Assembly: GCF_006345805.1 (NCBI RefSeq)
Contig: NC_043013.1
Span: 7,316,001 to 7,380,000 of the forward strand
Length of the DNA stretch: 64,000 bases
Direction of reading: 5' to 3'
Source of the DNA: Octopus sinensis
Lineage: Eukaryota
Shown here: one piece after another, positions 21,501 through 24,500 of the stretch
Position numbering within the stretch: position 1 is the stretch's first letter
Layout: the number at the start of each line of letters is the position of its first letter
Program-made: the position numbers and the translations under genes
The notes under the pieces: model-generated
What the model saw: the letters and a program-made list of their open reading frames with translations, nothing else
What the model was told of the DNA's origin: nothing
The model's database searches: none

Positions 21501-24500
21501 ATACTCAGTAAGAAATCTATAGCATTTGATATCCAGAGAAATGGATTGTAGTCTCTCATAGTCAGCGAGCTGGCAGAAATGTTAGCACACCGGGCGAAAT
21601 GCTTAGCGGTATTTCATCTGTCGTTACGTTCTGAGTTCAAATTCCGCCGAGGTCGACTTTGCCTTTCATCCTTTCAGGGTCGATAAATTAAGAACCAGTT
21701 ACGCACTGGGGGTCGATGTAATCGACTTAATCCATTTGTCTGTCCTTATTTATCCCTTCTGTGTTTAGCCCCTTGTGGGTAGTAAAGAAATAGGTAGTCT
21801 CTCATAGTCTGAGAAAGATGGTTCTGCAATTTCTTGCTGAACATTCAGTACAAATGGTTTGTTTATAGTGATCAAATGTGTTGAAAATTAGCTCCCTCCT
21901 TCCATCAAATTGGTATTACCTGAACAGGTGCATGGTTTGCCATGCGTCAAATGTCAAAGTAATCGCAGAGCAACGTGAGATAAAGTGTTTTGCTCAAAAA
22001 CACAGCACACTGCCCTGTCCAGGAACTGAAACCACCATCTTGTGATTGTGAGTACACCATCATAACTACTAAGCCATGTGCCCTCAACTATCCAGAGAAA
22101 TAAGCGATATAATCCCAACTTAAGAAGTGACATCTTGAGACAACTCCAGTTGTCTCAACACAAAACATTGCTTATTAAGTGTCATCCAATCAATGGACAC
22201 AATTCTATCATGTGATGTTTTCACTCCCACATTGTTTATTATTTAAGGTTACATTGATCTGTCCAAGGGAACAGTTTATGGACTCTACCAGGTGACATTA
22301 GATATACATCTTTTCATTGTTGCAGATTTATTTTTTTCCCCTTAGCATGCTTACTGTGGTACAGACGGTTCATTTTGCATCATGGACAATTGAAGTTACA
22401 GTTTACCATTTTGCATTTTAGTTTGGAATTGTTACAATGTTTCCTTCCTTCATTTATTGATTTATTCTCTGAGCATAAAATCATAATTTGTCTTACATTA
22501 TAACACATCCTTAAATGAATAAAATCAGGAGTCTTCTTGCCATTCTTCTTGTAGGTTTCCCATTGAATGTCATATCCTTGTTGCCATATCTGGTACACCA
22601 TTATGAAGATCCTAGCAAGAAATGCCGACAAGCTGCTGAAAATATCAGTAAAGTGAGTAAAATAATTGATTTTTATATTTTTAGGTGAGAAACTAAATTT
22701 TTTCAGAGAAAATTGAAGTTCATATAGTACTTACTTGTACTTACTTGTAGCGACATTCACCCTGGGTGGGTTGAGTCAGCTACTTCTACCACCCTCGAGG
22801 CATCTCGAAGAAGTTGGAAGAAGTTTCGTGGAAATATGTGGATTTCACAAGCGGTCCCCAACAATCCCGCATGTAGAGACATCCTGTTTGCCGCAGATTG
22901 TCCGCAGACGCAGGGACAGAACGACCGAAGAGCCGCTGGTTGCCGAAACAGACACTCCGAGGATTTTCACCAGAGTCCCGTCTGCCGGGTTGTGGCCCTA
23001 ATACCACTCGGTGTCAGACCAATCCGCCTTGGGTGGCCCTACCAGGAACCGAAGTTCCCAACAGCATAGCTCTGACACAACCCGTTGCCAGCATCCCCAC
23101 CATGGTGAGGAGGGGATGGACTTTGGGGATGCTATTGAAGTTGCATATAGTCAGTTAAATCAACCTCAGAATTTTACAGACGAGAAAGAAATATTTCAAA
23201 TGCAGGATAACTGTAAAAACAGCAAAAAGTTTGGATATTTTACACTTATAAGACAGAAAGTGTTGTCAGCAAATAGCTACAAGACTTGAACCTGTAGCCC
23301 TCAGATACCAGCTGAGTACTATACCTATTTCTTTACTACCCACAAGGGGCTAAACACAGAGAGGACAAACAAGGACAGACAGACGGATTAAGTCGATTAT
23401 ATCAACCCCAGTGTGTAACTGGTACTTATTTAATCGACCCCGAAAGGATGAAAGGCAAAGTCGACCTCAGCGGAATTTGAACGCAGAACGTAACGGCAGA
23501 CAAAATACAGCTACACATTTCACCCGGCGTGTTAACGTTTCTGCCAGCTCGCCACCTTCATAGTACTCGCTGAGTACTATACCATTAAGCTAAACAGTCC
23601 ACTGACAACAATCACTGTCAAATTAAATGCTAATCGATAGTAGCTTTTGGAATGCGACAACATTTTGCAAACAAAATTTGCAAGCATTGAATGTGTTTCG
23701 TATTTTACAGACAAGAAAATAATATTTCAAAAGCAGTATAACTGTGAAAACAGCAGAAAGATTTGATATTTTACCCTTATATGACGGGAAAAGCTGTCAT
23801 TTTTGTAATAGCTGCAGGCATGCCTGTGCTGTTAAGAAGTTTGCTCATGTTTAATCCTTCATAAATATATTCTGTCTATTGTATTTCAGATGTGCGCACA
23901 ACAGTCTGAGAGATTGGACAATCTAGCAACAGTAATGTCCCTCTACAGCCGTGGAACCTTTAACAAAGATAGCCTCCAATGGACAAAATGTGTGGTCAAA
24001 TACCTGCTTGATGTTTACTTGTCAGCCAGTTTGAGTATGGTGACTCTTCTTGTTGAGGTAATGATAATAATTGTTTCAAATTTTGACACAAGGTCAGCAA
24101 TTTTGGGGGAGGGGCTAAGTCGATTATATTGACACCAGTGCTTAACTGGTACTTATTTTATCAACCCTGAAAGATAAGTGGATAAGTTGACCTCAGTAGA
24201 ATTTGAACTCAGAACAGAAAGGCAAATGAAATGCACACTGCATCTTGCCCAGCATACTAATAATTCTGCCAGCTCACTGCCTTAATAATAATAAAAGTAG
24301 TAGTAGTAGTAATGATAATAATAATAATAATAATAATAATAATAATAATAATAATAATAATGTCCTTGGGGACAGTATCAGAAAGCATCAAGAGGAATTT
24401 AAAGGAAACCAGAATAGAATACCCAGTAGAATTGTTACAAGAGGTTTGCCTCTTTGGTCAGAATAATCAGGAGAGTATCAGATATTTGAAAAGAACACAT

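What the first reader, a model, noticed from the sequence alone, without database searches (positions are those of the whole stretch)
22974..23133. Candidate HDV-like self-cleaving ribozyme starting exactly at the 5' end of a TSD-bounded retroposon
Seen on the minus strand: P1 AGCAUCC (23133-23127) pairs with GGAUGCU (23096-23090), followed directly by GG (P1.1) and CAA. P2 AGUCC (23122-23118) pairs with GGACU (22978-22974). A CUCCUC L3-like segment lies at 23112-23107. A 9-bp P4, CGGGUUGUG/CACAACCCG, is followed by J4/2 G-C-A-G-A with a C at the catalytic position (22984). The order matches the HDV nested double pseudoknot. The first P1 nucleotide is the first base after the TSD, as expected if self-cleavage made the RNA 5' end. 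HDV-like ribozymes in RTE 5' UTRs are established. A long-P4 version in a cephalopod non-autonomous element may be undescribed. Weak points: P3/L3 is longer than canonical (17-19 nt between P2 and P1'), P2 has two mismatches, and position 1 is A rather than G.
Basis: partly seen in the sequence, partly recalled or inferred. Interest (0 to 1): 0.85.

Follow-up and report, generated by a model that had tools for sequence, protein, structure and literature searches.

The report
Possible HDV-like ribozyme on RTE retroposon
A 405-base retroposon that borrows its tail from an RTE jumping gene begins with an RNA fold laid out like the HDV-type self-cleaving ribozymes known from such elements, but its catalytic core departs from the known pattern and no second copy could be found to prove it.

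Summary
P1 is in fact a perfect 10-bp complementarity, P4 is 9 bp perfect, and P2 is 5 bp perfect. The fold starts at the first base inside a 17/18-nt target-site duplication.

The element (23133..22729) is a two-part, non-autonomous RTE derivative. Its last ~115 nt match the ORF end and 3' tail of an RTE fragment at 29905-30280.

A Watson-Crick-only descriptor for the HDV-like layout hits one of 128,000 window positions (this one). It hits about 6 per million positions in composition-matched random sequence.

The catalytic core is not canonical:
- There is no flush 3-bp P3.
- L3 has A where the family keeps a conserved G.
- Nucleotide 1 is A, not G.
- A local hairpin competes with P1.

Rfam gives only a sub-threshold hit to one HDV-type family (12.6 bits against a cut-off of 44).

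No other copy exists in the window or in any searchable collection, so covariation and 5'-end uniformity could not be tested.

Verdict: a plausible HDV-like ribozyme, or a decayed copy of one, with probability about 0.5. If real, it is a new member of a known kind.

The parts
23134..23151 (-). Upstream copy of the target-site duplication (ACTATATGCAACTTCAAT)
   Evidence: Sequence; direct-repeat seed D5; flank print-out
22729..23133 (-). Whole retroposon (405 nt): a two-part, non-autonomous RTE derivative
   Evidence: Bounded by the TSD. Single copy in the window. The 3' part is homologous to an RTE
23124..23133 (-). P1 5' strand (nt 1-7 as P1; perfect complementarity runs to nt 10)
   Evidence: I4
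23118..23126 (-). P2 5' strand (nt 12-16 perfect; nt 8-16 if extended across one A x C mismatch)
23097..23117 (-). P3/L3 region (nt 17-37), register unresolved. Option A: P3 nt 18-22/33-37 with a C x U mismatch and a 10-nt L3. Option B: P3 nt 21-25/33-37 with a U x U mismatch and L3 UCACCAU
   Evidence: and the covariance-model alignment. The descriptor with a canonical P3 fails
23101..23103 (-). AUG in a CACCAUGG context inside the P3/L3 region; it opens a 29-codon ORF (23103..23014)
23090..23099 (-). P1 3' strand (nt 38-44 as P1'; complementarity starts at nt 35)
   Evidence: I4
23085..23089 (-). GG (the 3' strand of P1.1) followed by CAA (J1.1/4)
   Evidence: Aligned to the model consensus GGCAA
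22986..23084 (-). P4 domain: a 9-bp perfect closing stem (23084-23076 with 22994-22986) around an 81-nt branched insert
   Evidence: I8 and I1; folds
22979..22985 (-). J4/2, G-C-A-G-A-C-G; the candidate catalytic C is at 22984
   Evidence: CAGA fits the CRRA of the published descriptor (PMC6326823)
22970..22978 (-). P2 3' strand (GGACU 22978-22974; extension to 22970)
22733..22846 (-). RTE-derived 3' module (element nt 288-401): the end of an RTE ORF (...DSTHPG, stop) plus the 3' UTR
   Evidence: nhmmer E = 9e-4 against 30155-30266(+); alignment A1; translations
22729..22746 (-). 3' terminal short tandem repeat (about two 10-nt units, ACAAGTAAGT type)
   Evidence: D2
22712..22728 (-). Downstream copy of the target-site duplication (ACTATATGAACTTCAAT)
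29905..30280 (+). 5'-truncated RTE LINE copy of the likely partner lineage. Its ORF ends ...SSTHPG, stop, and it has the same TCAACCCACCC(A/C)GGGTGAATG 3' box

Best explanation
The 405-nt insert is a two-part, non-autonomous RTE retroposon: an RTE-type 5' end joined to the last ~115 nt of an RTE.

Its first ~165 nt are most likely an HDV-like self-cleaving ribozyme, or a mutated copy of one, inherited from the parent RTE's 5' UTR.

Inferred mechanism, none of it demonstrated here:
1. The element is transcribed as part of a longer host or read-through transcript.
2. Nt 1-7 pair with nt 38-44 (P1). Nt 12-16 pair with nt 156-160 (P2). G45/G46 pair with two C's of L3 (P1.1). P4 closes a large peripheral domain.
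3. C150 (window 22984) in J4/2 acts as the general acid. The 2'-OH of the base just upstream of nt 1 attacks its own phosphate.
4. This releases an RNA with a 5'-OH exactly at nt 1.
5. The RTE reverse transcriptase recognises the shared 3' box and repeat tail in trans and copies the RNA by target-primed reverse transcription. That produces the 17-nt TSD and regenerates the ribozyme at the new copy's first base.
6. The AUG inside the fold may be the remnant of the parent's translation start.

Shown: the anatomy, the TSD, the RTE tail homology, and the non-random helix layout.

Inferred: catalysis, the cleavage site, and trans-mobilisation.
For: - All helices are present at the stated coordinates, with P1 10 bp and P4 9 bp perfect.
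- The layout with Watson-Crick pairs occurs once in 128,000 window positions and about 6e-6 per position in matched random sequence. It occurs zero times in 76.9 kb (both strands) of related contigs.
- It starts at the first base after the TSD.
- GG-CAA after P1', and G-CAGA after P4, fit the published descriptor for the P1.1 G's and the CRRA J4/2 (PMC6326823).
- A narrow Rfam scan brings up one ribozyme family only, RF02682, an HDV-type family. The hit is on the minus strand, covers the full model, runs 23132-23057, and has P1 in the same register.
- The 3' module is RTE-derived.
- RTE is one of six LINE clades reported to carry a 5' self-cleaving ribozyme, and two-part RTE derivatives keep the parent's 5' end (PMC5786205).
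- Active natural HDV-like ribozymes tolerate a P3 mismatch, odd L3 spacing and a very variable P4 (PMC3774820).
- The energy of the pseudoknotted fold is roughly comparable to the nested minimum-energy fold.
Against: - No Rfam family reaches its gathering score. The HDV-type hit is 12.6 bits against a cut-off of 44, with E = 3.9.
- No canonical 3-bp P3 lies flush with P2 and P1'. Every P3 register needs an internal mismatch or a 9-10-bp P1.
- Nt 17-32 contain no G, so the conserved L3 G is an A in every register. In R2, a sow-bug ribozyme with C-to-A and G-to-A changes at conserved L3 sites was inactive (PMC3774820).
- Nt 1 is A paired to U, instead of the G1-pyrimidine pair fixed in the descriptor.
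- J4/2 has two extra nucleotides.
- A local hairpin (nt 16-25 with 33-42) uses the P1' strand and is part of the minimum-energy fold.
- The 160-nt fold is no more stable than shuffles (z = -0.72).
- The descriptor statistics are post hoc.
- There is no second copy anywhere, so there is no covariation evidence.
Confidence: 0.5

Rival explanations
1. The 5' region is a structured but non-catalytic 5' UTR of the parent RTE: a 10-bp terminal hairpin or alternative hairpin, a long-range closing helix and a branched domain. It would serve as an internal promoter, a translation or packaging signal, or a stabiliser. The 5' end would be set by transcription initiation, and the HDV-like order of helices would be coincidental.
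For: - The nested minimum-energy fold of nt 1-170 (-67.1 kcal/mol) already uses the P2-like helix, the local hairpin and P4 without any pseudoknot.
- The core lacks the conserved L3 G, G1 and a canonical P3.
- No Rfam family reaches threshold.
- A Kozak-type AUG sits inside the supposed active site.
Against: - The 10-bp complementarity of nt 1-10 is left unused in the nested fold.
- The GG-CAA and G-CAGA junction strings and the exact helix adjacency are very improbable together.
- 5' self-cleaving ribozymes are an established feature of the RTE clade (PMC5786205).
Confidence: 0.3
2. Pure chance: a GC-rich, C-run and G-run rich stretch in which a reader searching from a fixed anchor can always assemble some HDV-like set of helices.
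For: - With G-U pairs allowed, the same descriptor fires at 1-2 per 1000 positions in matched random sequence and 19 times in the window.
- C-rich nt 2-30 and G-rich nt 33-46 pair in several registers.
- The descriptor was tuned after the fact.
Against: - The Watson-Crick-only version is unique in the window and occurs at about 6e-6 per position at random.
- P1 is 10 bp (0.016% when anchored) and P4 is 9 bp perfect.
- The independent coincidence with a TSD-defined 5' end of an RTE derivative adds to this.
Confidence: 0.1
3. A different 5'-processing ribozyme class, for example a twister variant as found at the 5' end of Perere-3 and reported as in preparation for RTE-superfamily elements, rather than an HDV-like one.
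For: Twister variants sit at the 5' ends of Perere-3 non-LTR elements and cleave 5' of an A (PMC8501958). Truncated twisters at RTE 5' ends are mentioned in PMC7761336. This element starts with A.
Against: - No twister, twister-sister, hammerhead, hatchet or pistol match, even at E <= 10 in a 181-nt search.
- The conserved L4 and L1 strings listed for twister variants are absent from nt 1-170 (print-out).
Confidence: 0.03
4. A classical SINE whose head derives from a small RNA gene transcribed by RNA polymerase III, with the RTE tail added.
For: The element is short, has an RTE-type tail, and contains loose A-box-like and B-box-like strings (TGGCAACGGG at nt 44-53, GGTTCC at nt 83-88). This rests on my own reading of the sequence.
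Against: - No tRNA, 5S, 7SL or snRNA match within the element at E <= 10, and ARAGORN finds nothing.
- The box-like strings lie too far from nt 1 for a tRNA-type head.
- The head carries an AUG in a strong context, as a LINE 5' end would.
Confidence: 0.05

Closest known systems
HDV-like self-cleaving ribozymes at the 5' ends of non-LTR retrotransposons (R2, R4, RTE, L1Tc/ingi and others; Ruminski et al. 2011 as cited in PMC5786205; PMC3774820; PMC3185411)
   Same: - Position at the very first nucleotide of the element.
- Order of helices P1-P2-P3/L3-P1'-P1.1-P4-J4/2-P2'.
- A 7-bp P1 core, a P2 of at least 5 bp, GG after P1', and C followed by purine-purine-A in J4/2.
- A large variable peripheral domain.
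- The host is an RTE-type element.
   Different: - A1-U instead of a G1-pyrimidine pair.
- No flush 3-bp P3.
- L3 is 7-13 nt depending on register and lacks the conserved G.
- J4/2 is 7 nt.
- P1 complementarity is 10 bp.
- A strong competing hairpin is present.
- Below every Rfam threshold, and activity is untested.
Two-part ('bipartite') non-autonomous LINEs of the RTE clade (Kojima 2018, PMC5786205)
   Same: A 5' module of LINE type, carrying an AUG in a good context, is joined to the last ~115 nt of an RTE (ORF end, 3' UTR and short-repeat tail). The element is TSD-flanked and a few hundred bp long.
   Different: The parent RTE's 5' end was not found, so the LINE origin of nt 1-287 is inferred and not shown.
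Rfam RF02682, the HDV-type ribozyme of Faecalibacterium prausnitzii
   Same: It is the only ribozyme family to align. P1 (nt 2-8 with 37-43), a 3-position P3, a 7-nt L3 starting UC, and then xGGCAA all align to the consensus.
   Different: The score is 12.6 bits against a gathering score of 44. The outer P3 pair is U x U. L3 has A where the consensus has G. The P4/J4/2/P2' part was not aligned to the real 3' strands because of the ~100-nt P4 domain.
NARTc (non-autonomous L1Tc) and internally deleted R2 derivatives that keep the parent's ribozyme (PMC3383444, PMC3414825)
   Same: A non-autonomous deletion derivative retains the 5' ribozyme module and the 3' recognition module of its LINE.
   Different: The LINE clades and hosts differ, and activity was shown for those ribozymes but not here.
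Twister-variant ribozymes at Perere-3 5' ends (PMC8501958)
   Same: Same proposed job: 5'-end processing of a non-LTR retrotransposon next to its TSD.
   Different: A different fold. None of the twister signature strings or Rfam matches is present.

Membership tests
HDV-like self-cleaving ribozyme | Nested double-pseudoknot order: P1, P2, P3/L3, P1', P1.1, P4, J4/2, P2' | tested here: met
   P1, P2, P4, the GG of P1.1 and J4/2 lie in the right order with Watson-Crick pairs. The layout is unique in the window
HDV-like self-cleaving ribozyme | P1 of 6-7 bp beginning at the cleavage site, with P1' directly followed by the P1.1 G's | tested here: met
   Nt 1-7 pair with nt 38-44 and are followed by G45 G46. 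The complementarity extends to 10 bp, which is longer than usual. P1 length is per PMC3774820
HDV-like self-cleaving ribozyme | G at position 1 paired with a pyrimidine (G1-Y in the published descriptor) | tested here: not met
   Nt 1 is A, paired with U44. Descriptor from PMC6326823
HDV-like self-cleaving ribozyme | A 3-bp P3 flush with P2 and P1', closing an L3 of about 7 nt | tested here: not met
   The descriptor with this requirement fails. The available registers have a C x U or U x U mismatch, or need a 9-bp P1 with a 13-nt L3
HDV-like self-cleaving ribozyme | Conserved L3 nucleotides (U, C, C ... C, G), including the G that pairs with the first U | tested here: not met
   UCCUC and UC..C are present, but nt 17-32 contain no G. 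An A stands at the consensus G position in the covariance-model alignment. Descriptor
HDV-like self-cleaving ribozyme | P1.1: two C's of L3 able to pair with the two G's after P1' | tested here: inconclusive
   CC is available at nt 24-25 or nt 29-30, depending on the P3 register. In the covariance-model register, L3 positions 2-3 are C and A
HDV-like self-cleaving ribozyme | Catalytic C at the start of J4/2, followed by purine, purine, A | tested here: met
   G-C-A-G-A at 22985-22981 with C at 22984. Two extra nucleotides (C, G) precede P2'
HDV-like self-cleaving ribozyme | Score at or above the gathering threshold of an Rfam HDV-type family | tested here: not met
   No hit at gathering score. 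The best is RF02682 at 12.6 bits against 44
HDV-like self-cleaving ribozyme | Covariation in P1, P2 and P4 across homologues | not testable with these tools
   No second copy in the window, in the protein-indexed collections or in the DNA collections
HDV-like self-cleaving ribozyme | Mg2+-dependent, C-dependent self-cleavage 5' of nt 1 | not testable with these tools
   Needs a bench experiment
Two-part non-autonomous RTE retroposon | 3' end homologous to an RTE LINE (ORF end, 3' UTR and short-repeat tail) | tested here: met
   nhmmer E = 9e-4 for nt 288-401 against 30155-30266. The ...STHPG-stop ORF end is shared. Alignment A1. Tandem 10-mers at the end
Two-part non-autonomous RTE retroposon | Target-site duplication and no coding capacity of its own | tested here: met
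   17/18-nt TSD. Only short ORFs, with no homologues for the one searched
Two-part non-autonomous RTE retroposon | 5' module identical to the 5' end of the parent LINE | not testable with these tools
   No full-length partner RTE is in the window. The protein search with the partner's C-terminus found nothing
Twister / T-variant ribozyme | Twister conserved loops and pseudoknots; Rfam twister models | tested here: not met
   No match at E <= 10. The signature strings from PMC8501958 are absent
tRNA- or small-RNA-derived SINE | Head recognisable as a tRNA, 5S, 7SL or snRNA | tested here: not met
   No such Rfam match inside the element. ARAGORN finds none

The most novel reading that the evidence does not exclude
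The family consensus is an active HDV-like ribozyme with a non-canonical core. It would have a 4-5-bp mismatched P3 with a 7-10-nt L3 that does without the conserved L3 G, an A-U closing pair at the cleavage site, a start codon embedded in P3/L3, and a built-in competing hairpin that could gate cleavage. That would widen the accepted definition of the HDV fold and explain why descriptor and covariance-model searches miss such elements.
Probability: 0.1. Interest if true: 0.65.

Novelty: new member of a known kind. Interest (0 to 1): 0.38.

Why it matters
If confirmed, it would add one more animal lineage and one more non-autonomous RTE derivative to the list of retroposons that define their own 5' end by HDV-type self-cleavage.

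It would also show how far the P3/L3 core can drift, which bears on how many such ribozymes current descriptor and Rfam searches miss.

If the consensus has G at nt 1 and at the L3 position, this copy is simply a decayed member and the finding is routine annotation. Either way the element's structure is now clear: RTE tail, TSD and exact ends.

Tried and rejected
1. Rfam scans. At gathering score over the whole window there were no hits. At E <= 10 over 901 nt there was no ribozyme family. Only the 181-nt scan showed the sub-threshold RF02682 hit.

2. A second copy in the window. blastn with word size 7 and nhmmer with --max found none. Only the RTE-tail match at about 30.2 kb appeared.

3. 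Copies through ORF translations.
- The search for homologous proteins with the 86-aa antisense ORF that spans the whole candidate found none.
- The same search with the partner RTE C-terminus found none.
- Exact look-ups of the 73-aa and 41-aa sense ORFs found none.

4. The search for related loci with the 86-aa ORF in the metagenome, viral and prokaryote-genome collections gave only chance pattern matches.

5. More host DNA through the other RTE family in the window (58586-59047, minus strand).
- 278 relatives were found, mostly in ENA metagenome assemblies.
- Four contigs were fetched (L001-L004).
- They share nothing with the window except that LINE, at 70-72% nucleotide identity for L001 and L002 (L003 and L004 were not compared to the window).
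- They hold no copy of the element, no Rfam hit and no descriptor hit.
- They are probably from another species.

6. The G-U descriptor hit at 62153(-), about 3.1 kb upstream of that RTE's ORF end, was inspected. It is AT-rich with weak G-U pairing and was rejected as chance.

7. The tandem RTE junction in L003 was checked as a possible full 5' end. The second copy is 5'-truncated inside the endonuclease domain.

8. An empty-site paralogue was sought by joining the two flanks. None was found; only an unrelated ~110-nt repeat family matched.

9. Ruminski 2011 and Webb & Luptak 2011 could not be read because they are not held.

10. No sequence of the virus itself was fetched or written. The comparison used the published designed-ribozyme descriptor and Rfam.
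Full report
**Coordinates and numbering.** Everything is on the minus strand. I number the element from its first base, so nt n equals window 23134 - n.

**What is in the sequence**

- AGCAUCC (nt 1-7, 23133-23127) pairs with GGAUGCU (nt 38-44, 23096-23090).
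- The repeat finder shows that the perfect complementarity is really 10 bp, nt 1-10 with nt 35-44 (I4).
- GG (nt 45-46) and CAA (nt 47-49) follow directly.
- AGUCC (nt 12-16) pairs with GGACU (nt 156-160, 22978-22974).
- This helix can be lengthened to 9 bp, nt 8-16 with nt 156-164, at the cost of one A x C mismatch.
- CGGGUUGUG (nt 50-58) pairs with CACAACCCG (nt 140-148) perfectly, across 81 nt (I8).
- Between P4 and P2' lies G-C-A-G-A-C-G, with the C at 22984.

**The element and its ends**

The insert is flanked by ACTATATGCAACTTCAAT (23151-23134) and ACTATATG-AACTTCAAT (22728-22712). This is a 17/18-nt duplication with one indel. The base after the upstream copy is A23133, while the base after the downstream copy is T. 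The 5' boundary is therefore unambiguous. The element runs 23133..22729 (405 nt) and ends in two 10-nt tandem units (D2).

**What kind of element it is**

The only other match in the window is its 3' end.
- blastn finds 21 nt at 30225-30245.
- nhmmer extends this to nt 288-401 against 30155-30266, with E = 9e-4 (alignment A1).
- That second locus is a 5'-truncated RTE LINE. Its reading frame shows the usual RTE C-terminal region and ends ...EASSTHPG-stop.
- The element's own frame ends ...VADSTHPG-stop at the homologous place.
- Both share the box TCAACCCACCC(A/C)GGGTGAATG.

So the 3' ~115 nt are the end of an RTE ORF plus its 3' UTR and repeat tail.

The 5' ~287 nt have no relative in the window. 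They carry no tRNA, 5S, 7SL or snRNA signature. They hold an AUG in a CACCAUGG context at nt 31 that opens a 29-codon ORF.

This is the anatomy of the two-part non-autonomous LINEs described for the RTE clade, which usually keep the 5' end of their parent. PMC5786205 suggests the 5' self-cleaving ribozyme as a possible cause of that.

**Is the helix layout more than chance?**

I wrote a descriptor for the HDV-like order:
- a 7-bp P1;
- GG right after P1';
- a 9-25-nt segment containing CC;
- a 5-bp P2 starting 0-7 nt after P1;
- a P4 of at least 5 bp starting 1-4 nt after GG;
- a 3-7-nt J4/2 with C in its first two positions.

Results with Watson-Crick pairs only:
- The candidate passes.
- It is the only passing start among all 128,000 positions of the window.
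- Two 1-Mb Markov sequences with the element's own composition gave 6 and 0 hits.
- 76.9 kb (both strands) of fetched eukaryote-like contigs gave none.

Anchored at nt 1, a 7-bp Watson-Crick P1 has probability 0.7%. With GG after it the probability is 0.095%, and for a 10-bp stem it is 0.016%.

Two cautions apply. The descriptor was written after seeing the candidate. With G-U pairs allowed it becomes unspecific, at 1-2 per 1000 positions and 19 hits in the window.

**Where it departs from the family**

The published descriptor (PMC6326823) fixes these features:
- G1 paired with a pyrimidine;
- a 3-bp P3;
- L3 with U, C, C, then C and G;
- two C-G pairs in P1.1;
- C-purine-purine-A in J4/2.

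Against that descriptor:
- **J4/2.** The CAGA fits, though two more nucleotides precede P2'.
- **Nt 1.** It is A, paired with U44.
- **P3.** The descriptor fails as soon as a 3-bp P3 flush with P2 and P1' is demanded.

Three P3 registers are possible:
- **Register A.** P3 is nt 18-22 with 33-37, with a C x U mismatch. L3 is 10 nt and begins UCCUC.
- **Register B.** P3 is nt 21-25 with 33-37, with a U x U mismatch, and L3 is UCACCAU. This is the register of the minimum-energy fold and of the Rfam alignment.
- **Register C.** P1 is 9 bp, P3 is nt 17-19 with 33-35, and L3 is 13 nt.

Constrained folds of the nested part give -48.6, -51.8 and -52.6 kcal/mol respectively.

In every register L3 has no G, because nt 17-32 contain none. 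The R2 survey notes an inactive sow-bug ribozyme with C-to-A and G-to-A changes at conserved L3 sites. It also notes an active jewel-wasp ribozyme with a P3 mismatch and odd L3 spacing. The deviations therefore weigh against activity of this copy without excluding it.

**Competing fold**

- A near-repeat of the P1 5' strand (CCAUCCCC, nt 15-22, against GCAUCCCC, nt 2-9) forms a local hairpin with the same G-rich strand (I9).
- That hairpin is in the minimum-energy folds.
- The minimum-energy fold of nt 1-170 (-67.1 kcal/mol) combines the hairpin with the P2-like helix and the P4 domain, and leaves nt 1-4 and nt 7 unpaired.
- Adding rough stacking values for P2 and P1.1 to the nested HDV-like folds brings them into a similar range. 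This is my estimate.
- Thermodynamics therefore does not decide.
- The 160-nt stretch is no more stable than shuffles (z = -0.72). The whole element is somewhat more stable (z = -2.05).

**Rfam**

- Nothing reaches a gathering score in the window.
- A 901-nt scan at E <= 10 shows no ribozyme.
- A 181-nt scan shows one: RF02682, the HDV-type ribozyme of F. prausnitzii. It scores 12.6 bits against a cut-off of 44, with E = 3.9, on the minus strand at 23132-23057, over the full model.
It places P3 at nt 23-25 with nt 33-35, L3 as UCACCAU against consensus UCUaCGU, and then UGGCAA against AGGCAA.

Taken alone this score is not significant. My scaling of the E-value to the whole window gives about 0.3 expected hits per family. 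It does show that an independent model places an HDV-type fold in the same register at the element's 5' end.

No twister, hammerhead, hatchet or pistol match appears. That matters because twister variants also process non-LTR 5' ends, as shown for Perere-3.

**Comparative evidence: not obtainable**

- No second copy exists in the window.
- Protein-indexed searches with translations of the element and of its partner RTE found nothing.
- Pattern scans of the metagenome, viral and prokaryote collections found nothing related.
- The other RTE family of the window (58586-59047, minus strand) does have relatives in ENA metagenome assemblies, up to 88% amino-acid identity.
- The four contigs I fetched share only that LINE with the window, at 70-72% nucleotide identity for L001 and L002. 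They contain neither the element nor any HDV-type hit.

The 'cephalopod' origin also remains unverified.

**Most likely mechanism (inferred)**

1. The element is co-transcribed with its surroundings, and the 5' module folds into the double pseudoknot.
2. C150 (22984) protonates the leaving group while the upstream nucleotide's 2'-OH attacks.
3. This frees an RNA that begins at nt 1 with a 5'-OH.
4. An RTE reverse transcriptase supplied in trans recognises the shared 3' box and tail and copies the RNA into a new site by target-primed reverse transcription.
5. That step makes the TSD. Because the cut is at the ribozyme's own first base, the complete ribozyme is copied too.

The one-indel TSD suggests some age, so this copy may carry inactivating changes. 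One specific, testable guess is that A28 arose by CpG-to-CpA decay of the descriptor's C-G step in L3, and A1 arose from G.

**Comparison with the known, and novelty**

- 5' HDV-like ribozymes are established for R2, R4, R1, RTE, Ingi and LOA.
- Very variable P4 and J1/2 sizes are documented.
- Ribozyme-bearing non-autonomous derivatives are known for L1Tc/NARTc and R2 (listing: PMC3383444, PMC3414825).

A long P4 in a non-autonomous RTE derivative is thus not a new kind of thing. If real, this is a new member of a known kind. Only if the off-pattern core proves active would it be a new variant.

**Probabilities**

| Reading | Probability |
|---|---|
| The family's 5' module is, or was, an HDV-like ribozyme | about 0.5 |
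| A structured but non-catalytic 5' UTR | about 0.3 |
| Plain chance | about 0.1 |
| Other readings | the remainder |

Interest: 0.38.

Noticed in passing
window 23321-23433 (-), 1244-1356 (+), 35716-35817 (+), 56200-56310 (+), 56384-56488 (+), 21686-21796 (+), 51234-51341 (+), 9147-9256 (+), 5161-5269 (-): A ~110-nt interspersed repeat family has at least 10 copies in the window at 88-96% identity, and many further ~40-nt partial matches. One copy lies about 190 nt upstream of the retroposon. It is probably the dominant SINE of this genome.
   Followed up: partly
window 23271-23340 (-): A weak tRNA-like match (RF00005, 19.7 bits against 29, E = 0.3) with a good T-arm. It overlaps the 3' edge of the repeat above. 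ARAGORN calls no tRNA anywhere in the window.
   Followed up: no
window 29905-30280 (+): A 5'-truncated RTE LINE copy whose ORF ends ...SSTHPG-stop, followed by an AAG-rich repeat tail. It is the only relative of the retroposon's 3' module in the window. Its C-terminal 107 aa have no relatives in the 5.8-billion-protein collection.
   Followed up: yes
window 29700-29900 (+): Just upstream of that RTE fragment lies a SINE-like stretch with a B-box-like GAGTTCAAATTCC string. Part of it (29821-29860) matches the ~40-nt core of the abundant repeat.
   Followed up: no
window 58575-59047 (-): A second, different RTE-clade LINE 3' end: a 153-aa ORF followed by a (TGA)n tail. It has 278 relatives, mostly in ENA metagenome assemblies (ERZ27289496, ERZ27290340, ERZ25072740), at up to 88% amino-acid identity. 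This means host DNA of related animals sits in those 'metagenomes'.
   Followed up: partly
L003 560-1020: In an ENA contig the (TGA)n tail of one RTE copy is followed at once by another copy that is 5'-truncated inside the endonuclease domain. This is a head-to-tail arrangement.
   Followed up: partly
window 15014-15840 (+): Two overlapping long ORFs (240 and 211 aa) are made of a repeating peptide-like unit (...[18 protein letters not shown]...). This indicates a GC-rich tandem repeat (minisatellite) that ends in a TA-type microsatellite.
   Followed up: no
window 23112-23119 and 23125-23132 (-): There is a direct near-repeat GCAUCCCC / CCAUCCCC inside the candidate. Both copies can pair with GGGGAUG(C), which gives two mutually exclusive folds: P1 or a local hairpin. 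It could be an on/off switch or just low complexity.
   Followed up: partly
window 3315-3842, 20654-21112, 30673-31080, 32687-33480, 62228-62721: Many long 'ORFs' are artefacts of microsatellites and low-complexity runs (TA, CA/TG, poly-A/T-like). The window is 37% G+C, whereas the retroposon looks distinctly G+C-richer than its surroundings by eye (not computed).
   Followed up: no
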